64,000 nucleotides of DNA from Ascidiella aspersa (taxonomy: Eukaryota): contig OZ004608.1 of assembly GCA_963924565.1 (NCBI GenBank), positions 6,882,001 to 6,946,000 on the forward strand. The letters are read 5' to 3'. Shown here one piece after another: positions 1 to 63,200 of this stretch (positions are counted from its first letter, which is position 1; each line of letters opens with the position of its first letter). The notes beneath the pieces are model-generated. The model had not been told where the DNA came from, ran no database searches, and was given only the letters and a program-made list of their open reading frames with translations. The translations under genes and the position numbers were made by a program.

Positions 1-3000
1 CCAAACAATGGATTTTACATCGGTTTGAAGCGGATCGCAAGTGGTGGTGAGTTCCGATGGTTGGACGGGACAGCTTTGATGTATAAGTCATGGGGAAAGG
101 ATCAACCTGACAACCACAGCGGGCCCGAAAATTGCGTCACCATGGGTATATCGTGGGGTGTCAGTCTTAAGTGGTATGACATTTCTTGTGGAATATCTGC
201 AGGATACATATGCCAGAAAAATGATGGTGAGTGGACACTTAACCCTGTAAATACTTATTTTATAGGTTTTTAATTTAAACAAAAATGATGCTTTTACAAG
301 GAAAATGGAACAAATATTGCATTGCCATTTAGAAATTTCGCGTAGTTCAATGAAACATTTATTTTTATAGTAACAACAAAAAACAGCGAATCTGTCACTT
401 CATCTACAATACAAATATCTGGACCGTTTACGAGCGTAGAAAAAAATATATCAACTAGGTCATTACTCCACACAACAACCGTTGGTCGGAAGGTGGTGTC
501 CTATGGCTTATTGTCTACTGACAAAGGTAGTATAGACTTTGTAGAAAGAATGCTAACTTAGTCCCAAAATGATCTATACATATAAGTGAGTTTGATGTAG
601 GCCCGAATTGTCTTTTAAACGACCAAAGGAAATATACAACAACCAATTTAAAACGCTGGAAAAACAGGTTTAGCATAAAATCAGTTCACCTATAACTTTT
701 GGTTTGGTTCATTGAAATATCATGCTAATAATGCATTGCAAAATGTTTTTACCTTTATTGATGGTTGATTCTTGCTGTAAGGTTCCTTACCCCTTGCATT
801 TCCAAACACTCCGTAAGCCCTTTCCAAGAAGTGATATTTTTATACTATACATAACCTAAAAACAAGACAGAAGCAAGTAGATAATTCAACATCACCTGAT
901 TAATCGCTTGCAGCACACCATTGTGACTGCAAAAACAAATCATATTTATATCTAGAATTGGGGTATAAGTTTAATAATAATACAGATATAATAGGTATAG
1001 ACTACTGCTTAAATCAAACTTCTACTATCACGTTTTTATATCTTTAAAGCTTTTACGACATCAAACGAGGAAACTTTCCAGGTAACACCTTTCAACATAG
1101 CCATCATAGCTTCCTCGGCAGGTGGTGGTAGTCTGCTCCTGATTATCATCATAGCTGCTGTGTTGGTTTGTCTAAGGTTAGTGGCTAATTTAGGCCCAAC
1201 CATATAAAAATGCGATGCACTGCTTTAATCTATTCCAAAGTCGATAATTTTGTATACATCGTTTTCTAAAAGTTTTATTTAAAAAAGTAAAAGCATAAAG
1301 AATAAACTAAGAACAGAACTTAATTAACCGAAAATCGGTTTGTTTGGATGTTATGTGATAAATATATTTCGCTATAGTAAAAGCATCATCAGTATCTGAA
1401 AATATAACACAATATAAATCAAGATGTACGGTACTAAAACCCCAAACCTATACTGTTCACATATTCGATATCATTGATGTGCAACCAGAATCGTTTATTT
1501 TACCATTTGGATTCAGGCAGATTTTTTTATTCAAAAGAATGTAACAAGGAGGTGAAATTCTGAGGTGAAATTCATCTTTTTTGTTGTTGTTAGAAGGATG
1601 CAAAAATCTAAATCCGCGAAGAATACATCGAGTACAACAGATCCTACAGGTGTAATATGTTTGTACGTTTATAAAATATATCGTAGGCAAAACATGCTAT
1701 GCCCACGTATAATTTAGACAGGCTCGATACTAACTATAAGTATACTCCACAAAAGACGAACAAGAATTTTTCACAGTTCGAATGGCATAATTTGCTAGGT
1801 CTCGTCAAATCCCTTTGTCGCAAACTGTTTTGTCCGTGTAATAATTAGAAAATATATTGTGTTTATTTGCTTGACTTGGCATTTTTCTGGCAGCCCAGCA
1901 TGCTAACGTTGTTAGCGCGGATGAAAACGATGGAACTCACAACACCGAAACATCCAATCTGGCCAAAGTTGATTTTAAAGATGAAACCACTTACGCTAAA
2001 ATAAACGAAACAGAGGATTCAAAATCTGAAGAGGGCGACCATGTTTACTCGAAACTTAACACCAATGTACCATCCTCTTCCGACTTACCACCCCCACCAC
2101 CAATAACAGAATATCAGGACATAAAGCAGGGAGCCGAATATTCCACAATAGAAGCAAATATTAAAGTCGAAGCCGAACCGAGCTACGCAGCTATAGACCA
2201 AACTCATGTGAGCAACGAAGGAGAAACACCGTTGGGCGACCAGTACAGCACCATGTATGATATCGCAAAACTGCCGGAAGAAGTGGTAAAGATTTCTGAC
2301 GTCAACGAATCTCTATACACGTCAATGGCAGGTTAGATGGCATTGTATAGAACTATAGAACAACATGTTTAGTAGTATAATGTACAAATTTTCAATGCAA
2401 TTAAATCGTTACGACTCAAGGAGAACCATCAAGGTTCGGTGAGGCCATAACAACAACAACTTTAATTTAAAGTGAAAAACATCGTCAAAAAGGAGCCTCA
2501 ATATCGCATAGTATAACTTTTAACATGTTTGATAGTATAACCAAATTCTTTTTAAATGAACTACATCCCTAATGACCTTACAAACCATTTAAATTTAAAG
2601 TGAAAATATTTCTGTTAGAAATGTGGCGTTATTAGTTCTGACGATAAGGCTGCAACGACAATGACAACTACTGGGAGCTGTAGGCCCTTACGTCTAAGCT
2701 GATAAATTGATCATTAATATATACTGCTGCAGGTAATCAGAAAGATCGAAAGACTATTCGTGGAAGTTCAACAGCTACCCAGAAGGCTGTTACCGATCAG
2801 CGAACAACATCATCCACTGCTGAATTATTATTGCCTCCACCACCACCGGACTTTTACATAACTGTGCACAAAGGTGGTAACATAAGATTAAATACGTTGT
2901 GTTCGTTATCTTAACCAAATTAAATCACCCTCCTATCCAATATAATAAAATAGGGCCAGTTACGCATACAGTTGTATTTTAAAAGTTATCCTATAACCCA

Positions 3001-21800: not shown

Positions 21801-23002
21801 GAGTCCAATTCTGTTGGTCTGCAAAGAAGAGCGGATCCCAGGACAGACGAAGGCTACAGCTCGCTTGAGATTGTAAGACCTGGCGAATCGGCATACGACT
21901 CGAATGTCCAATACAGCTCTATCAACACAACAGAGAGAAAGCCTTTAGGGCCTGACCAGGATGCGGTCTATTCTGCTGTGAACAAAGGTAAAATGGCTAA
22001 CTTTTGTAGAAGTGGGTCCTAATAAAATATATACAATATATATATATGTATATATATATGTTGTATTTCAATTAGCAGAAGCCTAATATTTTCTCTCGAT
22101 AGCAAAACCGATATTTTTGGTAAAAATAACTATATTTATTATTAAGCAAAATAGATGAAATTGAAATGTACAAACGTATTGTTTTCTAGGATATATAAGA
22201 AATAAATTTTCCTTAGCCTATCGAGGTTTAGTTTTTTCTTCAGTTAACAGCGTACCATGTTTAATAACTGTAACTTTTAGACTAAAATCAATGCATTCTA
22301 ACGCAAATTAGAGGTAAAATTGTTATATAAATTTGCTATTAAGTCTGTGGTGTACCATACTATGGTATCCTACTAGTTGAGTATGCTATACTATCGTATA
22401 ACATATATCTATATACTGCCATTTGGCATCTCATATTGGCTCTGATTTTAATTGTATTTCCTCAATGCAAGAAATAATCAATCAATTATTGAATATCTCT
22501 AATTGATTAATTGAAATTATAGCCTATTTATATAAGCCTTTGTTTTAAAATGTTCTTTTTTTTTTCAAACAACATACTCATAACAGTAACACCCGAACCA
22601 TTTAAAAATACAAACCTTTAGTAAGAATTTTTAAATGATATATATATATCAACTGTTAATAAACGGCGCCAAAACTTTTCGTCAGAAACAAAGAAAAAGT
22701 CCAATGAAAAGGAAACTGTGGCTAACCCGCTTTACGGAGAAACGAACAGTTACACTGAGAAGGAAACTGTGGCTAACCCGCTTTACGGAGAAACGAACAG
22801 TAACACTGAGAAGGAAACTGTGGCTAACCCGCTTTACGGAAAAACGAACAGTTACACAGAGAAGGAAACTGTGGCTAACCCTCTTTACGGAGACACGAGC
22901 CCCTCCTCGGAGAAGGAAACTGTTGCCAACCCTCTCTATGCTTCCTCCAACCACGAGCAGCATTCAACGCCTGATGATTTGTACTCGCAAGTAAAAAAGT
23001 GA
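15842..23002 (+). CDS. Gene 4: type I TM C-type lectin receptor, QPD/WYD head, duplicated Thr-rich stalk exon, tail with 5x NPLY repeat
   Basis: Exons 15842-16049, 16120-16341 (YIGL, QPD, WYD), 17977-18069 and 19357-19446 (EIPTTVLPTTHIATTTST..., both phase 1-1), 19939-20017 (TM LPIVIGAAGGGLLLICLIVFVILM), 20624-20673 (CRRR), 21724-21987 (AIYNAV, DEGYSSL, VQYSSI, AVYSAVNK), 22686-23002 (ANPLY repeats, DDLYSQVKK*). The join of head exons to downstream exons is inferred. Confidence 0.8.
17558..17689 (+). pseudogene. Collapsed lectin-gene 5' relic (copy 1)
   Basis: Acceptor-like acag then ATG: MNLKYFSARLGVKTWHLALQYKIEAATV* (resembles exon 1 TWH..Y.I), fused out of frame to INCDLKLGRYICQRFI plus a GT donor (exon 2 end). 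Confidence 0.55.
19028..19159 (+). pseudogene. Collapsed lectin-gene 5' relic (copy 2)
   Basis: MNLKYFSVLLSVKTWHLALQYKIEAATVST / INCDLKLGRYICQRSI|gt. Confidence 0.55.
22706..22940 (+). repeat. Coding VNTR, 51-bp unit (EKETVANPLYGxxNSYT), 5 units
   Basis: Directly repeated gagaaggaaactgtggctaacccgctttacgga.... Paralogous arrays at ~33049-33232 (4 units), ~41687-41820 (3) and ~50830-50962 (3). Confidence 0.95.
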
Positions 23003-30042: not shown

Positions 30043-33000
30043 ATGGTCACACTAGTCAATGTGATGATTGCATTTACTACTGCGACAAGTTCATTTGCGA
30101 CGTGGCACCAATTGGAAGACTTTCAATACAGCATTCAAAGCAATGTAAAGCGAACGTTTAAGGAAGCTGCTACGGCTTGCAGGGAAATGAATGCATCTCT
30201 GGTTAAAGTCAACTCGTCGATTATCCAAATGTTCTTAGCTCAGAAAATTAAAACAGGTAGCTTAAACAATTAAAGAGCGAATCAAACGTAACTCATATTT
30301 ATCAATTAGACAAATCATTCCTAAAGCTTAGTACTATTCTGGGTCACTATCCATTTTACGGAAGTTAGAATAATGTAGGCCTATTCGTTCGAACAAAATT
30401 GAGTCCCGAGTAAGACCAAAATAGAAATACACAATGTCGGAAAAACTTGTAAAGCGGAATTAAACAAGCCTTTCAGAAAACAACCTAAACGGACAGAGTA
30501 CGATTTTAACAATCTCTACTCTAAACACACATAGGGTATTACTGAGTCTTTTGTTTAACTATTATGTAAGGTGTTATCTAAAATTTCGATTTAAATATTG
30601 AGCTTTATTGTTTTTAGTGTGCGTTTCATTGTTCAGGTTCACGCACTTACTATATTGGATTAACGAGTGGAACGGATGACAAGTTCAAATGGTTGGACGG
30701 ATCAAGTTTAGCTTATACGAAATGGGAAAAGGGGGAGCCAAATGATTGGTGGTGGAATGAGGATTGTGCCGTGATGAAAGAGAGTCCAGAATTTTTTTGG
30801 AATGATATATCATGCAGCCGAAAAGAAAAATACATTTGTCAGAGACCAATTGGTATGTATACTGTATAGGCTATCCTTTACGTAGATTGTGAATGACCTA
30901 CGTTATACCAACAACTAAATATAATTATAAAGAAAGATTAAATTATTAATTTCGTTTCTGAAAAAAAACATTGCTTTCCCTAAATTATTGCCTGTTCGTT
31001 GGCCGAAACAAAAATATTATTTCTGATAGATTACCGAATCACTTAAACCCGATTGTGTGAAATGAAACATGCCTGCATAAAGTGCCTGATGAAGTGTCTC
31101 GGAAAATGCATACATGATTGATTGATTGTGTATAAACAACGTAAAGTTATAAATATCTAGCCTTGGAAATATCTACCACCACCCATGTTGTTGTATCCAA
31201 TAGCTTTGTTAGTTACGTTCATATTGAAGGTTTAGCATTTAATATTTTGTTTTGTAGTTTTATGTATTTACGTTGGTTTACAGAGCTACTTAGCCCTACA
31301 ACAGCTTCGTCGACTCATCAAACAACTGTTGAAGGCTTCACTAATGCGGTGATAAACCCCACAACTGTTAACAATAATGCACTAACCAAGAACGTTCCAA
31401 AAGGTAGCCATTGACTTCACTTTCTCAAACGTAATGTACAGTAAAACGACAATTCATCAAAATTATTTGGTTTCGAAAACAGTTTAACCCTCTTTGTAGA
31501 ACAAACTAAATATGAGCCCACTATCACGGATATGACGTCATACGAAGGAAAAACAATAAGCAGCAGATCGTCATCAGGTCACGTGTTTTTCTATGCAATT
31601 TGGCAAAAGTTAATTCGCATTGAAAGCGTAGCATTAATTGCGGAAGCATTTTGATTTTGCAAAACGATTATAGCCTTATTTGTAACGTAAAGGCTCTACT
31701 TGCAGACGGTCTTACTGAGACGTATGCAAAGAAATCTGGATCATCAACTGTTGAATAATTGCACCGATCTCCGGAGTTGTGCTTCTTTGCCTTGCAGCTC
31801 TTGCTGTAGCATTGTGCATAAGGTGGGTTGAACTGCTTATAACATGTGTAGGTTAAGAGTCTAAATTGTTTAAAGGCGTCATGTTCCTATTTTCAGGAAG
31901 AGCAGAGCGGTCGAACAACAACCAAGCATTAATCACGATGAAGGTTAGTGTTACATTCCCAGGTAGCCTATAGGACAATGCTCGTATATCTCGGCTGCTA
32001 AAAGCTCAAATTGCCTCTGCTAAAAGTTCAATATGAATTAGCCGGATAGTCAATAGTGTTGTCCGACACTTGTTATTCTATTCCGATACAAACAGATAAA
32101 CGCCGAGAAGCACGTTTATTGTAAACATGCTCTTTCTGAGAAATTTACGTTTCATAGTGGAAAACGCTCACAGTGGCAAAATGCTTTGTTCTGACTTAAA
32201 AATGCTTTGTTCTGACTTAAAATTTAGCATAGTTTAGTATACGATATGTTACGATACCACGCTACTATCGTACGAGAACAAATACTAGTATCGAGGATCG
32301 GTTGTTGTAATGGCACTCGACATTTCGAAAAGTGACCATGTTTGTTTCACATCCGGCCGTAAATGATTTCATCCGAAGTTGTTTTAACTGAAATAGTTGT
32401 CGGACTTGAAATATGTAAATGGGAAAAAACAAATCTTATTCTAAATTTGCTGATAGGTAATCAGGCCACGTCTCGGAATGTGAACGAAATGCCTGCAAAC
32501 AACGAATACTCGTCTTTAAACTTGGAAACTACTTCTCAACCTCACAGCGGTGGTCAAAATGCGTCTGAAACTGGCAACGATTATTCGCATCTTAACTTAT
32601 CCGGAATAGCAACTGGAAATGTCACCTCACAAGAACAGGCGGTGTACTCCGTGGCAACGATTGGTAAGCCTTCAACATAGATGTCCTAGGAATTACATTC
32701 ATCTAAAATCAACTAGCTTGGGATAGTGCAACGGCGGGCCTGCAAACTGAAGTCAAACATATTGACTCTGATTTTAATTGTATTTCCTCAAGACAAGAAA
32801 TAATCAAGAAGAAACAATCAATCAATTATTGAATATCTCTAATTAATTAATTGAAATTATAGCCTATTTTTATAAGCCTTTGTTTTAAAATATATTTTTT
32901 TTCAAACAACATACTCATAACAGTAACACCCGAACCATTTAAAAATGAAAACATTTAGTAAGAATTTTTAAATTACATATATATATATATATCAACTGTT

Positions 33001-33294
33001 AATAAACGGCGCCAAAACTTTTCGTCAGAAACAAAGAAAAAGTCCAATGAAAAGGAAACTGTGGCTAACCCGCTTTACGGAAAAAGGAACAGTTACACTG
33101 AGAAGGAAACTGTGGCTAACCCGCTTTACGGAGACAAGAACAGTTACACTGAGAAGGAAACTGTGGCTAACCCGCTTTACGGAGACACGAGCCCCTCCTC
33201 GGAAAAGGAAACTGTTGCCAACCCTCTCTATGCTTCCTCCAACCACGAGCAGCATTCAACGCCTGATGATTTGTACTCGCAAGTAAAAAAGTAA
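30043..33294 (+). pseudogene. Gene 5: EPN/WND lectin receptor with a 1-nt deletion giving a stop just before the TM (null allele or secreted form)
   Basis: Exons 30043-30256, 30637-30852 (EPNDWWWNEDC...WND), 31284-31403, 31500-31577, 31706-31822 (GTT GAA TAA at 31750-31758 versus GTT GTA ATA ATT in genes 6-8), 31897-31943, 32457-32663, 33029-33294. Confidence 0.85.
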
Positions 33295-38933: not shown

Positions 38934-41881
38934 ATGGTCACACTAGTCAATGTGATGATTGCATTTACTACTGCGACAAGCTCATTTGCGATGTGGCACC
39001 AATCGGACAACTTTGAATACAGCATTCAAAGCAATGTAAAGCGAACGTTTAAGGGAGCTGCTACGGCTTGCAGGGAAATGAATGCATCTCTGGTTAAAGT
39101 CAACTCGTCGATTATCCAAATGTTCTTAGCTCAGAAAATTAAAACAGGTAGCTTAAACAATTAAAGAGCGAATCAAACGTAACTCATATTTATCAATTAG
39201 ACAAATCATTCCTAAAGCTTAGTACTATTCTGGGTCACTATCCATTTTACGGAAGTTAGAATAATGTAGGCCTATTCGTTCGAACAAAATTGAGTCCCGA
39301 GTAAGACCAAAATAGAAATACACAAAGTCGGAAAAACTTGTAAAGCGGAATTAAACAAGCCTTTCAGAAAACAACCTAAACGGACAGAGTACGATTTTAA
39401 CAATCTCTACTCTAAACACACATAGAGTATTACTGAGTCTTTGGTTTAACTATTATGTAAGGTGTTATCTAAAATTTCGATTTAAATATTGAGCTTTATT
39501 GTTTTTAGTGTGCGTTTCATTGTTCAGGTTCACGCACTTACTATATTGGATTAACGAGAGGAACGGATGACAAGTTCAAATGGTTGGACGGATCAAGTTT
39601 AGCTTATACGAAATGGGAAAAGGGGGAGCCAAATGATTGGTGGTGGAATGAGGATTGTGTCGTGATGAAAGACAGTCCAGACTTTTTTTGGAATGATATA
39701 TCATGCAGCCGAAAAGAAAAATACATTTGTCAGAGACCAATTGGTATGTATACTGTATAGGCTATCCTTTACGTAGATTGTGAATGACCTACGTTATACC
39801 AACAACTAAATATAATTATAAAGAAAGATTAAATTATTAATTTCGTTTCTGAAAAAAAACATTGCTTTCCCTAAATTATTGCCTGTTCGTTGGCCGAAAC
39901 AAAAATATTATTTCTGATAGATTACCGAATCACTTAAACCCGATTGTGTGAAATGAAACATGCCTGCATAAAGTGCCTGATGAAGTGTCTCGGAAAATGC
40001 ATACATGATTGATTGATTGTGTATAAACAACGTAAAGTTATAAATATCTAGCCTTGGAAATATCTACCACCACCCATGTTGTTGTATCCAATAGCTTTGT
40101 TAGTTACGTTCATATTGAAGGTTTAGCATTTAATATTTTTGTTTTGTAGTTTTATGTATTTACGTTGTTTACAGAGCTACTTAGCCCTACAACAGCTTCG
40201 TCGACTCATCAAACAACTTTTGAAGGCTTCACTAATGCGGTGATAAACCCCACAACTGTTAACAATAATGCACTAACCAAGAACGTTCCAAAAGGTAGCC
40301 ATTGACTTCACTTTCTTAAACGTAATGTACAGTAAAACGACAATTCATCAAAATTATTTGGTTTCGAAAACAGTTTAACACTCTTTGTAGAACAAACTAA
40401 ATATGAGCCCACTATCACGGATATGACGTCATACGAAGGAAAAACAATAAGCAGCAGATCGTCATCAGGTCACGTGTTTTTCTATGCAATTTGGCAAAAG
40501 TTAATTCGCATTAAAAGCGTAGCATTAATTGCGGAAGCATTTTGATTTTGCAAAACGATTATAGCCTTATTTGTAACGTAAAGGCTCTACTTGCAGACGG
40601 CCTTACGGAGACGTATGCAAAGGAATCTGGATCCTCAACTGTTGTAATAATTGCATCGATCTCCGGAGTTGTGCTTCTTTGCCTTGCAGCTCTTGCTGTA
40701 GCATTGTGCATAAGGTGAGTTGAACTGCTTATAACATGTGTAGGTTAAGAGTCTAAATTGTTTAAAGGCGCCATGTTCCTTTTTTCAGGAAGAGCAGAGC
40801 GGTCGAGCAACAACCAAGCATTAATCACGATGAAGGTTAGTGTTACATTACCAAAGTATAGGACAATTCTCGCATATCTTGCCTTCTAAAAGCTCAAATT
40901 GAATTAGCCGGATGGTCAATAGTGTTGTTCGACACTTCTTATTCTATTCCGATACAAATATATAAACCCCGAGAACCACGTTTATTGTTAACATGCTCTT
41001 TCTAAGAAATTTACGTTTCATAGTGGAAAACGCTCACAGTGGCAAAATGCTTTGTTCTGACTTAAAAACGCTTATTTAGCATAGTTTAGTATACGATATG
41101 TAACGATACCACGCTACTATCGTACGAGAACAAATACTATAGTATCGAGGATCGGTTGTTGTAATGGTAATCGACATTTCGAAAAGTGACCAGGTTTGTT
41201 TCACATCCGGCCGTAAATGATTTCATCCGAAGTTGTTCATTTGTGTTTTAAGCAACTATATGTGTTATTATTTAACTAAGTTAAGTACATAAAAATTGAT
41301 GACATTTTAATTGAAATAGTTGTCGGAAACAAATCTTATTCTAAATTTGCTGATAGGTAATCAGGCCACGTCTCGGAATGTGAACGAAATGCCTCCAAAC
41401 AACGAATACTCGACTTTAAACTTGGAAACTACTTCTCAACCTCACAGCAGTGGTCAAAATGCGTCTGAAACTGGCAACGAATATTCGCATCTTAACTTAT
41501 CCGGAATAGCAACTGGAAATGTCAACTCACAAGAACAGGCGGTGTACTCCGTGGCAACGATTGGTAAGCCTTTAACATAGATGTCCTAGGAATTACATTC
41601 ATTTCAAATTACATATATATATATATATATCAACTGTTAATAAACGGCGCCAAAACTTTTCGTCAGAAACAAAGAAAAAGTCCAATGAAAAGGAAACTGT
41701 GGCTAACACGCTTTACGGAAAAAGGAACAGTTACACTGAGAAGGAAACTGTGGCTAACCCGCTTTACGGAGACAAGAACCCCTCCTCGGAGAAGGAAACT
41801 GTTGCCAATCCTCTCTATGCTTCCTCCAACCACGAGCAGCATTCAACGCCTGATGATTTGTACTCGCAAGTAAAAAAGTGA
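38934..41881 (+). CDS. Gene 6: intact EPN/WND type I TM lectin receptor, tail with YxxL motifs, NPLY repeats and C-terminal LYSQVKK
   Basis: Exons 38934-39147, 39528-39743, 40175-40294, 40391-40468, 40597-40714 (TM VVIIASISGVVLLCLAALAVALCI), 40789-40835, 41357-41563 (NEYSTL, NEYSHL, AVYSVA), 41667-41881 (NTLY, NPLY x2, DDLYSQVKK*). Confidence 0.9.
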
Positions 41882-47707: not shown

Positions 47708-50700
47708 ATGGTCACACTAGTCAATGTGATGATTGCATTTACTACTGCAACAAGCTCATTTGCGATGTGGCACCAATCGGACAACTTTGAATACAAAACT
47801 GAAAGCAATGGAAAACGAACGTTTAAGGGAGCTTCTACGGCTTGCAGAGAAATGAATGCAACTCTGGCCAAAGTCAACTCTTCGGTTATCCAAATGTTCT
47901 TAGCCCAGAAAATTAAAAGAGGTAGCTTAAACAATTAAAGAGCGAATCACACGTAACTCATATTTATGAAATAGACAAATCATTCCTAAAGCTTAGTACT
48001 ATTCTGGGTCACTATCCATTTTACGGAAGTTAGAATAACGTAGGCCTAATCGTTCGAACAAAATTGAGTTCCGAGTAAGACCAAAATAGAAATACACAAA
48101 GTCGGAAAAACTTGTAAAGCGGAATGAAACAAGCCTTTCAGAAAACAACCTAAACGTACAGAATACGATTTTAACAATCTCTACTCTAAACACACAAAGG
48201 GTATTATTAAGTCTTTGGTTTAACTATTTTGTTGGTTAGTAAGGTGGTATCTAAAGTTTCGATTTAAATATTGAGCTTTTATTGGTTTTAGTGTGCGTTT
48301 CATTGTTCAGGTTCAAGCACTTACTATATTGGATTAACGAGAGGAACGGATGACAAGTTTAAATGGTTGGACGGATCAAGTTTAGCTTATACGAAATGGG
48401 AAAAGGGGGAGCCGAATGATTGGCTGTGGAATGATGAGGATTGTGCCGTGATGCAAGACAGTCCAGACTTTCTTTGGAATGATATATCATGCAGCCGAGA
48501 AGAAGCATACATTTGTCAGAGACCAATTGGTATGTATGCTCTGTGGGCTACCATCAAGATTTTGAATGACCTAAGTAATATCAGCAACTAAATATATATA
48601 TAAAGCAAAATTAAAGTTCTAGTTTTGTTTCTGCAAAAATATTGTTCCTCCTAAATAATTGCCTGTTTGTTAGACGAAAAGCAATATTCTTTCTGATAGA
48701 TTACAGGATTAGTCATGCACGATTTTGTATACCGAAACAAAATTTCACACAATACGTGAAATGTCAAATTGTGATTGTGTGATTGTGTATATAAATTTGT
48801 ACACATATCAGAACGGTACACAATCCATAATAATCTATAACCTTCGGGTTTTAACCAAAATGATTCCATATCCTAATAAATCTCTACAAATATAGTAAGG
48901 CTAGAAATATGTAGCCTTAGAAATATCTACCACCACCCCATGTTGTTGTATCCAATAGCATTGTTAGTTGTGTTCATATTGAAGGTTTAGCATTTAACAT
49001 TTTTGTTTTGTAGTTTTATGTATTTACGTCGGTTTACAGAGCTACTTAGCCCTACAACAGCTTCGTCGACTCATCAAACATCTGTTGAAGGCTTCACTAA
49101 TGCGGTGATAAACCCCACAACTGTTAACAATAATGCACTAACCAAGAACGTTCCAAAAGGTAGCCATTGACTTCACTTTCTCAAACGTAATGTACAGTAA
49201 AACGACAATTCATCAAAATTATTTGGTTTCGAAAACAGTTTAACCCTCTTTGTAGAACAAACTAAATATGAGCCCACTATCACGGATATGACGTCATACG
49301 AAGGAAAAACAATAAGCAGCAGCTCGTCATCAGGTCACGTGTTTTTCTATGCAATTTGGCAAAAGTTAATTCGCATTAAAAGCGTAGCATTAATTGCGGA
49401 AGTATTTTGATTTTGCAAAACGATTATAGCCTTATTTGTAACGTTAAGGCTGTACTTGCAGACGGCCTTACGGAGACGTATGCAAAGGAATCTGGATCCT
49501 CAACTGTTGTAATAATTGCATCGATCTCCGGAGTTGTGCTTCTTTGCCTTGCAGCTCTTGCTGTAGCATTGTGCATAAGGTGGGTTGAACTGCTTATAAC
49601 ATGTGTAGGTTAAGAGTCTAAATTGTTTAAAGGCGTCATGTTCCTTTTTTCAGGAAGAGCAGAGCGGTCGAGCAACAACCAAGCATTAATCACGATGAAG
49701 GTTAGTGTTACATTACCAAAGTATAGGACAATTCTCGCATATCTCGCCTTCTAAAAGCTCGAATTGAATTAGCCGGATGGTCAATAGTGTTGTCTGACAC
49801 TTATTATTCTATTCCGATACAAATATATAAACGCCGAGAAGCACGTTTATTGTTAACATGATCTTTCTAAGAAATTAACGTTTCATAGTGAGAAACGCTC
49901 ACAATGGAAAACGCTCACAGTGGCAAAATGCTTTGTTCTGACTTAAAAACGCTTATTTAGCATAGTTTGGTAAACGATATGTAACGATACCACGCTACTA
50001 TCGTACGAGAACAAATACTATAGTATCGAGGATCGGTGGTTGCAATGGTAATCGACATTTCGAAAAGTGACCAGGTTTGTTTCACATCCGGCCGTAAATG
50101 ATTTCATCCGAAGTTGTTCATTTGTGTTTTAAGCAACTATATGTGTTATTATTTAACTAAGTTAAGTACATAAAAATTGATGACATTTTAATTGAAATAG
50201 TTGTCGGAAACAAATCTTATTCTAAATTTGCTGATAGGTAATCAGGCCACGTCTCGGAATGTGAACGAAATTCCCGCAAACAACGAATACTCGTCTTTAA
50301 ACTTGGAAACTACTTCTCAACCACACAGCGGTGGTCAAAATGCGTCTGAAACTGGCAACGATTATTCGCATCTTAACTTATCCGGAATAGCAACTGGAAA
50401 TGTCACCTCACAAGAACAGGCGGTGTACTCCGTGGCAACGATTGGTAAGCCTTTAACATAGATGTCCTAGGAATTACATTCATCTAAAATCAACTAGCTT
50501 GGGATAGTGCAACGGCGGGCCTGCAAACTGAAGTCAAACATATTGACTCTGATTTTAATTGTATTTCCTCAAGACAAGAAATAATCAAGAAGAAACAATC
50601 AATCAATTATTGAATATCTCTAATTAATTAATTGAAATTATAGCCTATTTATATAAGCCTTTGTTTTAAAATATATTTTTTTTCAAACAACATACTCATA

Positions 50701-51024
50701 ACAGTAACACCCGAACCATTTAAAAATGAAAACATTTAGTAAGAATTTTTAAATTACATATATATATATATATCAACTGTCAATAAACGTCGCCAAAACT
50801 TTTCGTCAGAAACAAAGAAAAAGTCCAATGAAAAGGAAACTGTGGCTAACCCGCTTTACGGAAAAAGGAACAGTTACACTGAGAAGGAAACTGTGGCTAA
50901 CCCGCTTTACGGAGACAAGAACCCCTCCTCGGAAAAGGAAACTGTTGCCAACCCTCTCTATGCTTCCTCCAACCACGAGCAGCATTCAACGCCTGATGAT
51001 TTGTACTCGCAAGTAAAAAAGTGA
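47708..51024 (+). CDS. Gene 7: intact EPN/WND type I TM lectin receptor, NPLY x3 and LYSQVKK tail
   Basis: Exons 47708-47921, 48311-48529 (EPNDWLWNDEDC...WND), 49040-49159, 49256-49333, 49462-49579, 49654-49700, 50238-50444, 50810-51024. Confidence 0.9.
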
Positions 51025-57036: not shown

Positions 57037-60000
57037 ATGGTCACACTAGTCAATGTGATGATTGCATTTACTACTGCGACAAGTTCATTTGCGATGTGGC
57101 ACCAATCGGACAACTTTGAATACAGCATTCAAAGCAATGTAAAGCGAACGTTTAAGGGAGCTGCTACGGCTTGCAGGGAAATGAATGCATCTCTGGTTAA
57201 AGTCAACTCGTCGATTATCCAAATGTTCTTAGCTCAGAAAATTAAAACAGGTACTTAAACAATTAAAGAGCGAATCAAACGTAACTCATATTTATCAATT
57301 AGACAAATCATTCCTAAAGCTTAGTACTATTCTGGGTCACTATCCATTTTAAGGAAGTTAGAATAATGTAGGCCTATTCGTTCGAACAAAATTGAGTCCC
57401 GAGTAAGACCAAAATAGAAATACACAATGTCGGAAAAACTTGTAAAGCGAAATTAAACAAGCCTTTCAGAAAACAACCTAAACGGACAAAGTACGATTTT
57501 AACAATCTCTACTCTAAACACACATAGGGTATTACTGAGTCTTTGGTTTAACTATTATGTAAGGTGTTATCTAAAATTTCGATTTAAATATTGAGCTTTA
57601 TTGTTTTTAGTGTGCGTTTCATTGTTCAGGTTCAAACACTTACTATATTGGATTAACGAGAGGAACGGATGACAAGTTCAAATGGTTGGACGGATCAAGT
57701 TTAGCTTATACGAAATGGGATTGGTTGGAGCCAAATGATTGGCTGTGGAATGAGGATTGTGCCGTGATGAAAGACAGTCCAGACTTTTTGTGGAAAGATA
57801 TATCATGCAGCCGAAAAGAAAACTACATTTGTCAGAGACCAATTGGTATGTATACTGTATAGGCTATCCTACGTTGATTTTGAATGTCCTACGTTATACC
57901 AACAAAAAATTATATACATGAAGCAAAATTAAATTACTAATTTCGTTTCTGAAAAAACATTGTTTCCCCTAAGTTATTGCCTGTTTGTTAGACGAAATTT
58001 TTTTAAAATATTACCGAATCATTCAAACCCGTTTGTGTATAACAAAACATGCTTGCGCAGAATACCTGAGATGTCTCGAAAAATGCATACATGATTGTGT
58101 ATATAAAATCGTAGAGACCTCAGAACGTTACGACATCCATAATATCAATAACTGTCGGGTTTTGACCCAAATCATTTCATATCCTAATAAATTTATATAA
58201 ACAACGTAAGGCAAGAAATATCTATAGTCTTACCCATGTTGGTTTGTTAGTTGTGAGCATGTTGAAGGTTCGACATTGAATATTATTTTTTGGAGTTTTG
58301 TGAATTTACGTTGTTTACAGAGCTACTTAGCCCCACAACAGCTTCGTCGACTCATCAAACAACTGTTGAAGGCTTCACTAATGCGGCAATAAACCCCACA
58401 ACTGCTAACAATAATGCACTAACCAAGAACCTTCCAAAAGGTAGCCATTAACTTTCCTTCCTCAAATGTAATGTACAGTAAAACGCTTGTTTGAGGCAGT
58501 AGTTTAGGTAATTTTAAAATTCTCTTGGTTAAAATCGTAGTATCCATAGATCAGTTTTGTGTTCGAAAACCATTAATCCTAAATTCATTTCTGATGGTAA
58601 TTTTAAATATGTTATAACATAGCTTCGGCATAATAAAATAGTCCGTTTGGGTGCTATGTCAATACAGAAAAGCTGTTTTTAGGAAGTCTTTAGGAAAGTG
58701 TTTAACGTAAAGCTGAGTTTATATATATTGCACACTGCTCGCTTTCGTTATATTTCTATAAATTATTTTATGTTGGAGCACAAATATTCTAAGACACTTT
58801 ACAGGGTTTTGCTTGACCCCTTAAAATAATTGTTGCATCATTCAGCTTATTGTCCTACGGCCAAATAGAGTTCATCAAAATAATTTGGTTCGTAAACAGT
58901 TTCACCCTCTTTGTAGAACAATCTCAATACGAGCCAACCTCCACGGATATGACGTCATTCGAAGGAAAAACAATAAGCAGCAGCTCGTCATCAGGTCACG
59001 TGTTATTCCTTACATTTTCGCAAAAGTTAATTTGCATCAAGTATAGCCTTACTTGCGATAACATTTTGATTTTGCAAAATGATAAGCCTTATTTGTAACG
59101 TTAAGGCTGTACTTGCAGACGGCCGCACTAAGACGTATGCAAAGGAATCTGGATCATCAACTGTTGTAATAATTGCATCGATCTCCGGAGTTGTGCTTCT
59201 TTGCCTTGCAGCACTTGCTGTAGCATTGTGCATAAAGTGGGTGTAACTGATTGAAGCATACGGTGGTTAAATGTCAAAATTGTGTAATTGTGCTTTGTTC
59301 CTTATTTTAGGAAGAGCCGAGCGGTCAAGCAACAACCAAGTATTAATCACAATGAAGGTTAGTGTTACATTACCCAGGTATATAGCCTATAGGAAAATTC
59401 TCGCATATCTCGCTTGCACGAAAATCAAATTGAATTAGCCGGAGAGTCAATAGTGTTGTCCGACACTTCTTATTTTATTCCGATACAAAAACCAAGTATT
59501 TCGGGAAAAAAAGTTTGAGCCGAACTGATCAAATTACAACGTAATTGCAACGTTAAGTTTTCAAAATGAAAAACAATGTTAAACACAAAATATAAATAAA
59601 CACCTAACAATTATTGTTAACATGCTTTTTCTAACAAATTTACGTTTTTTGGTGGAAAAAACTCACAGTAAACCAACGCTGTGTTTCACATTTGTACACG
59701 GTTATTTAGCACTGTTTTGTATCAGAATCGCGCGTGTTAACAATTTAATTACTTAATATTCATTTTAATTTCTAGGTAAAATATAAAGAATTACGGTTAA
59801 CTTAACGTCATTAACAGTAATAACTGAGCTATGTGCAGTAAAACGAGTTATTTGATTGTAAAGCACATGTTACTAGAAAAGGCACAAACGAGTAAGATTT
59901 CTATTAATACAATTTTTTAAACAACGTGGGGATGCGGCATTTTTCCGTAACAATTGAAAGCTATATTTTATTTCAAGAGGGAGAAAACAATAGTGAAGAC

Positions 60001-60213
60001 GAAAATGGCTACATTCGACTCAACCCTGTGCTACTATTACAAGAAGATGAAAACGGATACTTGCGATCTAACAAAGTGGTACCAGTCCAAGTATCGGTGG
60101 TTGGTGGACAGGAATACATGGAATTAAACGTCACTGGTTTACCCGAGGCTGGAGGTTCAGCTGTAATCTCAAACGCTTTTCAAGGGGCTCCAGTTTGCAA
60201 TAATATACTTTAG
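57037..60213 (+). CDS. Gene 8: EPN/WKD type I TM lectin receptor with a divergent hemITAM-like tail
   Basis: Exons 57037-57250, 57630-57845 (KWDWLEPNDWLWNEDC...WKD), 58321-58440, 58917-58994, 59119-59236 (TM), 59311-59357, 59978-60213 (EGENNSEDENGYIRLNPVLLLQEDENGYLRSNK...GQEYMELNVTGL...NNIL*). The last acceptor is a weaker AAG but is in phase. Confidence 0.83.
58486..58870. mobile_element. ~385-bp insertion in intron 3 of gene 8, probable DNA-transposon derivative
   Basis: Absent from genes 5-7 (gtaaaacg|acaattcatc); imperfect inverted ends cttgtttgaggcagtag / ctacggccaaatagag. Confidence 0.5.
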
Positions 60214-63200
60214 ATTTTTCCCAAGCAAACCATTATTGTACACTTAATGCTTAACAACTGGTTTGAAATTTCGACGTTATCCAAACTGTTCCTAAGAACC
60301 CTATAAAGATCGTTAATTACAGCATAAGTTATGTGCGATCTCATTTACGCCAGTTACATCTGTTAACAATTATCAATCATAATCTCTCTATTTGCGCTAA
60401 CAAAACGTCATTTAAAAACCCACAGAACTGTTAATTGAAATATTAAAAAAGTTGTTTGGAATTATTTTGGAATATATTTTGCTCTAAATTAACATCTTGC
60501 TTAAATACTGATATTTTGCTCATATTCCGTTTACATTTATTCCGTTGTTTTAGTTAAGGCTTGTAAATAAACTCTCCCAAAGACATTTCTGCACTTTGTG
60601 TCAGATATTTCAATACTATTATGCTTTTAAGGCCAGTAAATATTTAGGTGGGTAATCAATCAATATTTCAGGTCGAATAACCAAAGTTGTTTACTGAGCA
60701 AACTTTGGAAATATCGAAACTTCCTGCAATACTAATATCAAAACTTGGTCTACTTCACAAACGGTGAACCACTGAACCGCGGTTCACGATTTGATACATC
60801 AGCGACTTTTCTTACACTTGTTTCTCTAGAAATAACAAAATGTTTAATATTGCAGGAATGTATATAAATACATATAAAAAGGCATATTTTTATGAAATTG
60901 AAAACCATTGGCAAGTTTCTGCTTGCCAGTCACTGTTCCGCGGACGAGCATATTAACGACAAACTCAAAGTTTAAAAACCAGAGTAAAACCAAACCCGGA
61001 ACAGATATTTTCATAAGGGAATATATATTTCGTCTCTACTGGCATCGTCAGTTCCTTAATTCGAATAAATATGGTAGGAATGACTTAATGTTGCATTAAA
61101 TCTATGTTATAAGCCACTATATGTACTGTTTAAACCATGGCTTCCCGAACAGTGTGGTATGCAAAGTATGTTAGATGTCGGGTTTGCATTAACTAACTGT
61201 AAAACAAAGCATGTAGAAATAAATAAAAAACGCTTGCTTAGCTCTGTAAAACGTAACGTGTGGCGAACAGTTTTGGATTTTAAAACTGCGCGCAGACTGA
61301 TGACAATTTTAAGGAACCCCGCTTAAAATCATGCTGAAAAACGTCGTGATGAATCAATTTAATATTAAAGTTGCTATTTCTTTTTTTGTTCTTAAAATTC
61401 GTGCCAATAAAGACTTGAAAATCCAAAAATTTCCAAAAATTTAGATACCAACCAAAGACAATGAAACCTGTATGACGTGCAACAGCAAAAACACGGAATT
61501 AAAAGTTTGACCTATAGTCGTGCGTTTTAAAGGATTAAGGCCTCGTTTGTGACCAGCGCTTTAAAATGTCCCTTCATTTGCGGTATATATACTCTATTTT
61601 GTTTAGATAGGTGTTAATTTGACTCTTGTCGACTTTTTATTTTGCTTCGAGCGCAGCCAAAACTATTCAGATTTCCAATAGCCCAACAATGAATAGCGAC
61701 ATATAGAAATTAAATAAATCATAAACTGGTTAAACAAACTGAAAAGTTTCACAATACGCAGCGTTGATTATTCTTTTGCAAGTGAAGATCTATTTGGGGT
61801 GGCTGTGATTTTAAATAGTTTGACTAAGAAGTTAGAGACATGTGTATATTGTAATTTTATTTACTGTTATGTCGCGAAAGCATTTCCTACCGTGGATACG
61901 CAAAATTATCACTTATTGGCTTGTTTCTAATTGTCGGGTATTCGGCTAAAAAAAATGGTCGGGTATTCAGCTAATAATATGTTACAGTGCAAACGTTATA
62001 AAGGTCTTCTTTGTGGACCAATAAAATGGGACAAACTGCAAACTTTTCAGCACCAAAACCAATTCGAATAAAAACATGTCGATTCTCCTTTCATAACTTA
62101 CATTTTAATTTCCTTTTGCATCCTGAAAATGCAAACCCCTGCTACAATAAAACGTAAATTAACAGTCAACAACTCTCTACTCATGTCAAAGCATAAACGC
62201 AGAAAGGATTAAGTTTAAGAATAACTGCAGTTGACTTCTTCAATCTTTTTGGCATAAAGCAAATTGTTACCAAGCTTCGCGGCAAAGTAAAGCGCGTTTG
62301 CCGCGGAAACGACCTGGGTTGCCAAAGTCAGTATTTGGCTTGTTTGCACAGTCAAGCGAAGACACAGGAAGTATTTATTTTATGAAGAGTGCAGCGGAAC
62401 TAACTAAAAGTGTTTAAAAATAAATTGTTTGTTCGTATTGGAACTCTCATGTTGAGGCACGCTTATACATATTTTTGTGTGATTTATGCGATGTATTATA
62501 GTAAGAGCTATACGAAATAAATGTTACATTTTCTTTTTGGTGTTTCATCTTATGGGGCCTAAAAACAATGTTGAGACGAAAGACCATTTAAACTTTCGCT
62601 TGAGTTATTCCTTTGCGCAAAATCGTTTGCGATGTTGCCCGATAATCTATAGATTAATTATTTTCAATATACGAAAATTCAATCCTGCATTTTATTTATT
62701 TCTTTAACGCCTGGTATGCAAAAAAAATTTTATTTGATTTTGTAAATCCGGAATAACAGATGGATGTTTAACCTCTTCTGTTGTTTATTTTTATTAACGT
62801 CACCTTGCCATAAGGCTCACAAAACTAATTGATATAACTAACTTTCCACTGTTGCCAGAACGCCTTGGAAGTTGCCCAAATGAAAGGATTTTCCGAATTC
62901 ATCTACATAAACGCAAATTTCGCTAAATCAGAACTCTAAGTAAACAACTCAAGATAAAGTATGTACAGTATACCTATATCTAACAGACCCTGGTTAAATC
63001 CCATATTTCTTGGGACGCAGATATCAAAAACATCTAACGTGCCTAAATCAAAGGTTGCCTCTTATCCACTAGAATAGAAATTCCAACATGCGCCCTGCAC
63101 ACGCTGCTATGTGCATAGTTCGCTTTAAACAAGTATTATAAAGGATAAACGAGATGAAAAAAGCGGGATGTCGCCCAACGATTAAAGTTATCTGATTTGG

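What the first reader, a model, noticed from the sequence alone, without database searches (positions are those of the whole stretch)
57037..60213. Gene 8 looks like the activating twin of genes 5-7: near-identical head, tail switched to tandem hemITAM-like EDENGYxR motifs
Seen: gene 8 exon 1 encodes the same protein as gene 6 exon 1, and intron 1 is almost identical to genes 5/6. Identity falls through exons 3-6 and intron 6. Its last exon is a distant homolog of exon 7 of genes 5-7 (GQEYMELNVTGL...AVIS versus GNDYSHLNLSGI...AVYS). It has lost that last Tyr and the whole NPLY/LYSQVKK exon, and has gained EDENGYIRL and EDENGYLRS. Known: Dectin-1 and CLEC-2 signal via Syk through a hemITAM, DEDGYxxL. 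Paired receptors such as Siglec-5/Siglec-14 keep matching ligand-binding ends by gene conversion while their tails differ. Inference: a paired activating/inhibitory system with a convergent hemITAM in the opposite membrane topology.
Basis: partly seen in the sequence, partly recalled or inferred. Interest (0 to 1): 0.92.

Follow-up and report, generated by a model that had tools for sequence, protein, structure and literature searches.

The report
Chimeric sea-squirt lectin receptor gene
Gene 8 is an intact but recently assembled hybrid in a large sea-squirt cluster of membrane C-type lectin receptor genes, with a head from one subfamily joined inside an intron to the tail exon of another. The evidence does not support the proposed "activating twin of inhibitory genes 5-7".

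Summary
The sequence observations hold. Gene 8 (57037-60213) has seven GT-AG exons in a consistent frame, giving 342 codons. It encodes a signal peptide, an EPN-type C-type lectin domain, a Ser/Thr stalk, a TM segment and a 77-residue tail with EDENGYIRL, EDENGYLRS and QEYMELNV.

Gene 8 is a three-part mosaic:
- The promoter to mid exon 2 resembles genes 5/6 (97-99.5% identity up to the end of intron 1).
- Intron 2 up to 59726 resembles a gene 10 beyond the window (97-99% in the introns).
- From 59952 onward it resembles gene 14 (93%).
- A truncated 222-bp dispersed repeat sits at the joint.

The tail exon belongs to a "tail-B" exon family found in at least 8 genes, with dN/dS about 0.3 over the Tyr motifs. 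The family consensus for motif 1 is YIRP. Only gene 8 has Leu at +3, through one T at 60020, and two other DNA datasets show only C there. Motif 2 (YLRS) is not YxxL.

Genes 5-7 carry no ITIM. Their tail aligns with a canonical ITAM in gene 15 and adds 2-4 NPLY motifs, so it reads as activating or engulfment-type.

No RNA read covered gene 8, so splicing is untested.

Type I lectin receptors with a hemITAM (oyster CgCLec-HTM) and ascidian hemITAM/ITIM swapping (Botryllus FcoR) are already published.

The parts
57037..57250 (+). Gene 8 exon 1: start codon, signal peptide, first part of the C-type lectin domain. Ends in phase 1.
   Evidence: Open frame and GT donor. Weak Lectin_C match, 21.1 bits, below the cut-off. 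99.5% nt identity to gene 6.
57630..57845 (+). Gene 8 exon 2: rest of the C-type lectin domain, with EPN (57728-57736) and WKD (57791-57799) in place of WND.
   Evidence: Pfam PF00059, 46.1 bits. Aligns to mannose receptor CRD4 with EPN on EPN and WKD on WND. The switch from 5/6-like to gene-10-like sequence lies within this exon.
58321..58440 (+). Gene 8 exon 3: Ser/Thr-rich stalk.
   Evidence: AG/GT sites and phase 1 in, phase 1 out. 97.5% identical to gene 10.
58917..58994 (+). Gene 8 exon 4: stalk.
   Evidence: More diverged (88.5%) than the flanking introns (95-98%) when compared with gene 10.
59119..59236 (+). Gene 8 exon 5: transmembrane segment. Ends in phase 2.
   Evidence: 23-residue hydrophobic run followed by basic residues.
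59311..59357 (+). Gene 8 exon 6: juxtamembrane segment (KSRAVKQQPSINHNE). Ends in phase 1.
   Evidence: Only this frame stays open across the exon 5/6 joint.
59358..59726 (+). 5' part of intron 6, 99.2% identical to gene 10. The similarity stops at 59726.
59731..59952 (+). Truncated right part of a ~520-bp dispersed element with short terminal inverted repeats (MITE-like), at least 40 copies in the genome. It sits exactly at the joint between gene-10-like and gene-14-like DNA.
59978..60213 (+). Gene 8 exon 7 (tail-B exon, terminal): EDENGYIRL 59995-60021, EDENGYLRS 60043-60069, QEYMELNV 60109-60132, PVCNNIL 60190-60210, stop codon 60211-60213.
   Evidence: 91% amino-acid identity to the gene 14 tail exon. 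dN/dS 0.25-0.31 over the motif-bearing half.
60020..60020 (+). The single T that makes Leu (CTC) at +3 of the first motif. Gene 14 has C (Pro), and the contigs of two other DNA runs read C.
60214..61917 (+). 3' flank shared with gene 14 at 93%, with a conserved AATAAA at 60566.
32459..32668 (+). Comparison partner: exon 7 (tail A) of gene 5, with EYSSLNL, DYSHLNL and AVYSVA. Equivalents lie at 41359-41568 (gene 6) and 50240-50449 (gene 7).
33019..33291 (+). Comparison partner: exon 8 of gene 5, with NPLY repeats and a DDLYSQVKK end. Equivalents lie at 41657-41878 and 50800-51021, and in gene 4 at 22676-22999.

Best explanation
Gene 8 is a young, intact chimeric member of a birth-and-death cluster of at least 16 type I membrane C-type lectin receptor genes in a probable ascidian.

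Origin (shown from sequence): a non-homologous join inside intron 6 fused the head-stalk-TM-juxtamembrane part of the genes 5-7/10 subfamily to the terminal 'tail-B' exon and 3' flank of a gene-14-like copy. The breakpoint lies inside a MITE-like repeat that had inserted about 25 nt upstream of the tail exon. Later exchange made the promoter, exon 1 and intron 1 nearly identical to genes 5/6.

Function (inferred): tail B is a conserved, lineage-specific phosphotyrosine scaffold with three Tyr motifs. Tail A of genes 5-7 is an ITAM-derived double YxxL plus an NPxY array. The two tails therefore route one kind of lectin head to different adaptor sets. Tail B would recruit SH2 proteins only. Tail A would recruit SH2 proteins plus PTB-type endocytic or engulfment adaptors. 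They would not send opposite (activating versus inhibitory) signals.

The hemITAM look of gene 8 comes from one private Pro-to-Leu change on the family motif YIRP. It may or may not create a site for Syk-type kinases.
For: Gene model and mosaic:
- All seven exons have GT-AG borders and consistent phases.
- Identity by segment and the run of informative sites show the three-part mosaic.
- Gene 8 56905-59726 matches gene 10 at 94.9% over 2.8 kb, ending at 59726.
- Gene 8 59952-61917 matches the gene 14 tail region at 93%.
- 59731-59952 is a dispersed repeat with at least 40 copies. Other copies extend about 300 bp further left and share the right end.

Tail B:
- The exon occurs in at least 8 genes with different heads.
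- Tyr12, Tyr28 and the N-P after motif 1 are invariant.
- dN/dS is 0.25-0.31 over the motif region.
- The two EDENGY repeats differ at synonymous third positions only.

Tail A:
- It aligns with the canonical ITAM of gene 15 (E 7e-5).
- It holds no ITIM string.

Context:
- Two SH2-SH2-kinase open frames lie in the genome.
- Oyster CgCLec-HTM is a lectin with a C-terminal TM segment and a hemITAM, reported to signal through Syk (PMC12842671, PMC13027682).
- Botryllus FcoR tails carry hemITAM, ITIM, YxxI/L/V and [A/D]VYxxV motifs (PMC12582321). The last of these also occurs in tail-B copies, as DVYQNV in genes 11/12.
Against: - No transcript evidence. There were 0 reads on gene 8 in the only RNA run available, of which about 6% was read. 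The 59357/59978 splice and any expression are unproven.
- Gene 8 carries three private changes at otherwise conserved positions: WND to WKD, Pro to Leu at +3 of motif 1, and the final Tyr to Cys (PVCNNIL against PVYNNIL in gene 14).
- Exons 3-6 compared with gene 10 give pN/pS near 1. This fits relaxed constraint in a new, possibly functionless copy.
- Several neighbours are already broken (genes 5, 9, 10, 13).
- No homologue of tail B outside this genome was found, so the role of the motifs rests on resemblance alone.
- The order of the rearrangement events is inferred, not shown.
Confidence: 0.6

Rival explanations
1. First reader's model. Gene 8 is the activating partner, through tandem hemITAM-like motifs that recruit a Syk-type kinase. 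Genes 5-7 are inhibitory receptors that share the same ligand-binding head, as in Siglec-5/14.
For: - DENGYIRL matches CLEC-2-type DEDGYxxL at 6 of 8 positions (the vertebrate motif is recalled from memory; the Botryllus paper gives the pattern [E/D][E/D][E/D]xYxxL).
- A further YxxL (YMEL) lies downstream.
- The 5' end is homogenised with genes 5/6.
- Two tandem-SH2 kinases are in the genome.
- In 58,673 residues of + strand open frames across the cluster, the loose hemITAM pattern hits an exon only here.
Against: - Tail A has no ITIM or ITSM and is related to a canonical ITAM.
- Motif 2 is YLRS, not YxxL.
- The Leu of motif 1 is private to gene 8 and unconfirmed in other DNA samples.
- The acidic triad is incomplete (D-E-N).
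- The sugar-binding residues differ between gene 8 and genes 5-7.
Confidence: 0.12
2. Gene 8 is a functionless by-product of cluster rearrangement, a very young pseudogene-to-be whose reading frame has not yet been hit.
For: - Private substitutions at three conserved positions (WKD, Leu for Pro, Cys for the last Tyr).
- pN/pS near 1 in exons 3-6 compared with gene 10.
- No RNA reads.
- Four broken neighbours.
- A repeat fragment 25 nt from the acceptor might impair splicing.
Against: - 342 codons stay open across seven exons with all splice sites intact.
- The polypyrimidine tract and AG of exon 7 are kept as in gene 14.
- The poly(A) signal is conserved.
- The motif half of the tail shows 2 synonymous and 2 non-synonymous changes against gene 14, dN/dS 0.28.
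- The RNA sample was small and its tissue is unknown.
Confidence: 0.22
3. The tails are mainly sorting signals, not kinase-coupled signalling motifs. In tail B, an acidic cluster with a casein-kinase-type Ser (SEDE) plus YxxPhi would direct clathrin/AP-2 uptake and endosomal routing. In tail A, NPxY would direct Dab/ARH-type uptake. This resembles mannose-receptor-family and DEC-205-type endocytic lectins.
For: - The lectin domain is closest to mannose receptor CRD4, with further matches to DEC-205 (Ly75), PLA2R and Endo180. These are type I endocytic lectins.
- YIRL and YMEL fit YxxPhi.
- NPLY arrays fit LDL-receptor-type internalisation signals (established knowledge).
- The acidic EDE triad is a known DEC-205 targeting signal (recalled from memory).
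Against: - The family consensus YIRP/YLRS does not fit YxxPhi.
- Conservation centres on the Tyr and its acidic N-terminal context, as in kinase substrates.
- The cluster also holds a canonical ITAM.
- Sorting and signalling are not mutually exclusive.
Confidence: 0.2

Closest known systems
Oyster CgCLec-HTM / CgCLec-TM1 (transmembrane C-type lectins with a hemITAM that signal through Syk)
   Same: An invertebrate single-CTLD receptor with the lectin domain outside, a C-terminal TM segment and a Tyr motif of hemITAM type in the tail (PMC12842671, PMC13027682).
   Different: - No sequence relationship of the tails was found.
- Gene 8's motif is D-E-N-G-Y-I-R-L, with an incomplete acidic triad.
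- No binding or expression data exist for gene 8.
- Gene 8 sits in a head/tail-shuffled multigene cluster.
Botryllus schlosseri FcoR receptors (PMC12582321)
   Same: - Ascidian type I receptors in polymorphic clusters.
- Their tails mix hemITAM, ITIM, YxxI/L/V and [A/D]VYxxV motifs.
- Motifs are swapped between alleles and splice forms.
- The [A/D]VYxxV string also occurs in tail-B copies here (DVYQNV, DVYQDV).
   Different: - FcoR ectodomains are immunoglobulin-type, not C-type lectin.
- Swapping there is by alleles and intron retention. Here it is by genomic exon exchange.
- No canonical ITIM partner of gene 8 was found.
Vertebrate hemITAM C-type lectin-like receptors (CLEC-2, Dectin-1, DNGR-1, NKp80)
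   Same: A C-type lectin fold coupled to a single acidic-G-Y-x-x-L motif. The following Asn (YxxLN) also recurs, as recalled from memory.
   Different: - Those are type II proteins with an N-terminal tail and lie in the NK gene complex.
- The motif here is C-terminal to the TM segment.
- It is not conserved in paralogues.
- It lies in a tail with two further Tyr motifs.
Paired receptors kept similar by gene conversion (Siglec-5/14, KIR, Ly49)
   Same: Tandem paralogues with a homogenised 5' end and unrelated 3' ends, and birth-and-death turnover with pseudogenes.
   Different: - The homogenised tract here covers the promoter, the signal peptide and the first half of the lectin domain. The sugar-binding loops are excluded.
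- There is no ITIM versus adaptor-coupling dichotomy.
Draper / CED-1 / MEGF10 engulfment receptor tails (for tail A of genes 5-7)
   Same: A combination of NPxY (PTB adaptor) and ITAM-like double YxxL motifs in one type I tail (established knowledge).
   Different: - Different ectodomain.
- The spacer between the YxxL motifs is 21 residues.
- NPLY is repeated 2-4 times (five times in gene 4).

Membership tests
hemITAM | Single Y-x-x-L/I in the cytoplasmic tail | tested here: met
   Met for motif 1 (YIRL, 60010-60021) and for YMEL. Motif 2 is YLRS and fails.
hemITAM | Three acidic residues at -4 to -2, [ED][ED][ED]xY (pattern as used in PMC12582321) | tested here: not met
   The residues are D-E-N-G-Y. 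The strict pattern has no hit anywhere in the 114-kb cluster.
hemITAM | Motif conserved among relatives | tested here: not met
   Position +3 is Pro in genes 11, 12, 13, 14, L006 and L010, and Thr in gene 9. It is Leu only in gene 8. Two other DNA runs show only C (Pro) at 60020.
hemITAM | The phosphorylated motif binds the tandem SH2 of a Syk-family kinase | not testable with these tools
   Two SH2-SH2-kinase open frames exist in the genome. Binding needs a bench test.
ITIM-bearing inhibitory receptor (claimed for genes 5-7) | [ILVS]xYxx[ILV] in the tail | tested here: not met
   Tail A tyrosines read NNEYSSL, GNDYSHL, QAVYSVA, NPLYG/A, RNSYTEK and DDLYSQV. None fits.
ITAM | YxxL/I - 6 to 12 residues - YxxL/I | tested here: not met
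   Tail A has 21 residues between the two motifs. In tail B, the first and third motifs (YIRL, YMEL) fit YxxL but lie 31 residues apart, and the middle motif (YLRS) does not fit. A canonical ITAM occurs in gene 15 and aligns to tail A.
C-type lectin domain (PF00059) | Profile match over the gathering score, four-Cys framework, EPN/WND Ca-sugar site | tested here: met
   Exon 2 scores 46.1 bits against a 22.6 cut-off. Exon 1 scores 21.1 bits, a partial match. EPN is present. WND is replaced by WKD.
Paired activating/inhibitory receptors | Near-identical ligand-binding domain with opposite signalling tails | tested here: not met
   Exon 2 identity is 93-94%, and 12.5-14.5 of about 15 differences from genes 5/6 are non-synonymous, including WKD for WND and DWL for EKG next to EPN. 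The tails are not of opposite type.
Type I membrane protein | N-terminal signal peptide, one TM segment, basic residues after the TM segment | tested here: met
   Read directly from the translated exons. No predictor was run.

The most novel reading that the evidence does not exclude
A single Pro-to-Leu change on a freshly shuffled tail exon has turned a conserved YIRP motif into a working hemITAM. Gene 8 would then be a newborn receptor coupling an altered (WKD) lectin head to one of the two Syk-like kinases. That would be a snapshot of how activating lectin receptors arise, and evidence for a lectin-Syk route in the closest invertebrate relatives of vertebrates.
Probability: 0.12. Interest if true: 0.65.

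Novelty: new member of a known kind. Interest (0 to 1): 0.4.

Why it matters
Tunicates are the sister group of vertebrates, and how lectin receptors became wired to Syk/ITAM signalling is poorly documented outside vertebrates and oysters.

This cluster shows, in one 114-kb stretch, several lectin heads combined with several tyrosine-motif tails: a canonical ITAM, an ITAM-derived tail with an NPxY array, and a private three-Tyr tail. It includes a recent hybrid whose joint is still visible inside an intron.

That makes the cluster a useful natural set of chimeras for testing what each tail does. It does not, as it stands, show an activating/inhibitory pair or a new signalling principle.

Tried and rejected
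- RNA support. The only RNA run of the species label (X3) gave 0 reads on gene 8, with about 6% of the run read. Its only reads lay on a repeat at 60961-61061. This gives no verdict on splicing.
- Apparent structural polymorphism. Loose ends at 59726 and 59731 in DNA runs X1/X2 first looked like one. They are explained by cross-laid contigs of gene 10, whose sequence after 71350 matches the loose-end letters, and by other copies of the repeat.
- Profile search of the tail-B alignment against 1.84 billion representatives. It returned 5 hits, none a relative of tail B: the two strong ones are ankyrin-repeat proteins and the three weak ones are other long repetitive proteins.
- The search for homologous proteins with the tail exon. 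No candidate was found, and the length window limits this search.
- Pfam on both tail types. Nothing was found.
- Tail A against tail B profile comparison. Not significant.
- Retroposon reading of the joint repeat. I first read it as a 5'-truncated retroposon. Full copies are only about 520 bp and have short terminal inverted repeats, so a MITE-like element fits better.
- Joined protein. All searches were exon by exon, by reference. Whole-protein searches, structure prediction and complex prediction were therefore left out.
Full report
**What is there.** The window is G000:C2:6882001-6946000 of a 308.6-Mb genome that earlier notes of this scan call a probable ascidian. Gene 8 has seven exons: 57037-57250, 57630-57845, 58321-58440, 58917-58994, 59119-59236, 59311-59357 and 59978-60213. 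All have GT-AG borders, and the phases fit, giving 342 codons.

Exons 1 and 2 encode a signal peptide and a C-type lectin domain. Pfam PF00059 scores 46.1 bits on exon 2. The best solved relative is mannose receptor CRD4, with EPN aligned to EPN and gene 8's WKD aligned to WND. A Ser/Thr stalk, one transmembrane segment, a basic juxtamembrane exon and a 77-residue tail follow. This is a type I layout.

- Exon 1 is identical in protein to gene 6 and 99.5% identical in DNA.
- Intron 1 is about 99% identical to genes 5/6.
- Identity to genes 5-7 falls to 69-89% in the later introns.
- The two EDENGY motifs lie at 59995-60021 and 60043-60069.
- No NPLY exon follows gene 8.

These points are confirmed. 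The claim that the last exon is a diverged copy of exon 7 of genes 5-7 is not. tblastn finds nothing. A profile-profile comparison gives E=0.44 over 12 columns only.

**Where the tail comes from.** Searching the whole genome with the tail exon found relatives just downstream on the same chromosome, plus four weaker matches (30-53% identity) 0.44-0.81 Mb upstream. I fetched 50 kb beyond the window and mapped at least 16 lectin genes, all on the + strand.

The 'tail-B' exon is the terminal exon of genes 8, 9, 11, 12, 13 and 14 and of three of the four distant copies, on heads that differ from gene 8's. Gene 14's copy is 91% identical in protein. The similarity runs at 93% from 59952 to 61917, including a conserved AATAAA.

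On the other side, gene 8 from 56905 to 59726 matches gene 10 (4.7 kb beyond the window end) at 94.9%, and at 97-99% in introns 2-6. That similarity stops at 59726.

Between the two tracts, 59731-59952 is a dispersed repeat with at least 40 copies. Full copies are about 520 bp with short imperfect terminal inverted repeats. Gene 8 holds only the right 222 bp, with the natural right end about 25 nt before the exon 7 acceptor.

Informative sites show a third component. From 56645 to about 57705 gene 8 follows genes 5/6. It switches within exon 2 and then follows gene 10.

Gene 8 is thus a hybrid made by a non-homologous join inside intron 6, with later exchange at its 5' end. This part rests directly on the sequence.

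**What the tails say.** In the tail-B alignment, Tyr12, Tyr28 and the Asn-Pro after the first motif are invariant. The consensus reads EDENGY-IRP-NPVLP, then QEDENGYLR, then EYxELN, then [D/P]VYxN[V/I].

The motif-bearing half evolves at dN/dS 0.25-0.31. The two EDENGY repeats differ only at synonymous positions. Tail B is therefore a constrained coding module.

The Leu that makes YIRL exists only in gene 8. Six other copies have Pro and one has Thr. It depends on one T at 60020. The contigs of two other DNA runs read C there, although these may derive from gene 14.

The second motif is YLRS. The acidic triad is D-E-N, so the strict hemITAM pattern used in the Botryllus work is not met. Gene 8 has also lost the last family Tyr: it reads PVCNNIL where gene 14 reads PVYNNIL.

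**Genes 5-7 are not inhibitory by motif.** Their exon 7 carries EYSSLNL, DYSHLNL and AVYSVA. Their exon 8 carries two to four NPLY repeats (five in gene 4) and DDLYSQV. None fits an ITIM.

The tail of gene 15 holds a canonical ITAM (YSTL, 11 residues, YQHL). Tail A aligns to it with a 10-residue insertion in the spacer (E 7e-5). Tail B's third motif aligns weakly to the second half of that ITAM (E 0.009). This is the only support for a remote common origin of tails A and B.

NPxY together with a double YxxL recalls engulfment receptors such as Draper (established knowledge). Both tail types therefore read as positive signalling or uptake tails that differ in adaptor set.

**Heads.** The homogenised tract covers the promoter, the signal peptide and the first half of the lectin domain. 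The binding loops in exon 2 differ: WDWLEPN against WEKGEPN, and WKD against WND. Against genes 5/6 there are 12.5-14.5 non-synonymous and 0.5 synonymous differences. Part of this reflects the mosaic switch within the exon. The premise of matched ligand-binding ends is therefore weak.

**Is gene 8 used?** This is unknown. The single RNA run gave no read on the gene. Protein databases hold no relative of the tail.

Gene 8 is intact, but several neighbours are broken:
- Gene 5 has a 1-nt deletion in its TM exon.
- Gene 10 has an in-frame TAA in exon 4.
- Genes 9 and 13 have damaged tail exons.

I give about 0.2 to gene 8 being a functionless by-product.

**Effectors and precedent.** The genome has two intronless open frames of 606 and 608 residues with the order SH2, SH2, tyrosine kinase. 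This is the Syk/ZAP-70 layout. A Ciona sequence is included in the Zap70/Syk phylogeny of bioRxiv 10.1101/046789.

A hemITAM on a lectin with a C-terminal TM segment that signals through Syk is published for oyster CgCLec-HTM (PMC12842671, PMC13027682). Ascidian type I receptors that swap hemITAM and ITIM are published for Botryllus FcoR (PMC12582321). My searches of the held library found no description of this lectin cluster or of tail B.

**Verdict.** This is a real and interesting example of exon shuffling in an immune-type receptor cluster, but it is a new member of a known kind. The activating/inhibitory pairing is not supported, and the hemITAM reading rests on one private, unconfirmed residue.

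Because spliced models may be searched only exon by exon, no whole-protein search, fold or complex prediction was run.

Noticed in passing
window 31740-31770 (gene 5, TM exon): Gene 5 lacks one T present in gene 6 (about 40644). This shifts the frame inside the transmembrane exon, so gene 5 is probably a pseudogene or the assembly has a slip.
   Followed up: partly
L011:6590-6630 (gene 10, exon 4; ext 70615-70617): Gene 10 is the closest relative of gene 8's body. It has an in-frame TAA just before the exon 4 donor (TCA in gene 8), and no NPLY exon lies within 3 kb of its exon 7. It may be a pseudogene or a secreted, truncated lectin.
   Followed up: partly
L015:7395-7454 (gene 15 tail) and window 2136-2195 (gene 1 tail): A canonical ITAM (YSTL, 11 residues, YQHL) lies in the tail open frame of gene 15. 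An ITAM-like YSTI, 12 residues, YAAI lies in gene 1's tail, which has at least eight tyrosines.
   Followed up: partly
window 21906-21923 (gene 4, exon before the NPLY exon): The string VQYSSI fits the canonical ITIM pattern. It is the only ITIM string I noticed in the tail open frames I read; I ran no ITIM scan of the cluster. AVYSAV follows it.
   Followed up: no
G000:C1:3416139-3417899 and G000:C1:31715643-31717409: Two intronless open frames of 606 and 608 residues each hold two SH2 matches followed by the two best tyrosine-kinase matches of the genome. This is the Syk/ZAP-70 layout, apparently duplicated and without introns.
   Followed up: partly
window 22676-22999, 33019-33291, 41657-41878, 50800-51021: The number of EKETVANPLY repeats varies between paralogues: five in gene 4, four in gene 5, three in gene 7, and two plus one NTLY in gene 6.
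   Followed up: no
window 57630-57845 versus 30639-30851 and 39530-39742: Exon 2 (the lectin binding loops) differs from genes 5/6 almost only at non-synonymous sites (pN/pS 5-6). Exons 2 and 4 are more diverged than the flanking introns when compared with gene 10. This points to diversifying selection or micro-conversion.
   Followed up: partly
window 60961-61061: A short high-copy repeat (contig depth about 3,900 against about 100-400 nearby). It is the only place in the laid stretch with RNA reads.
   Followed up: no
L011:1696-1962 (gene 9) and L012:5928-6194 (gene 13): The tail-B exons of genes 9 and 13 carry an in-frame stop and, in gene 13, a frame shift across the second EDENGY motif. 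Both end in a further EYYEIINP motif absent from gene 8.
   Followed up: no
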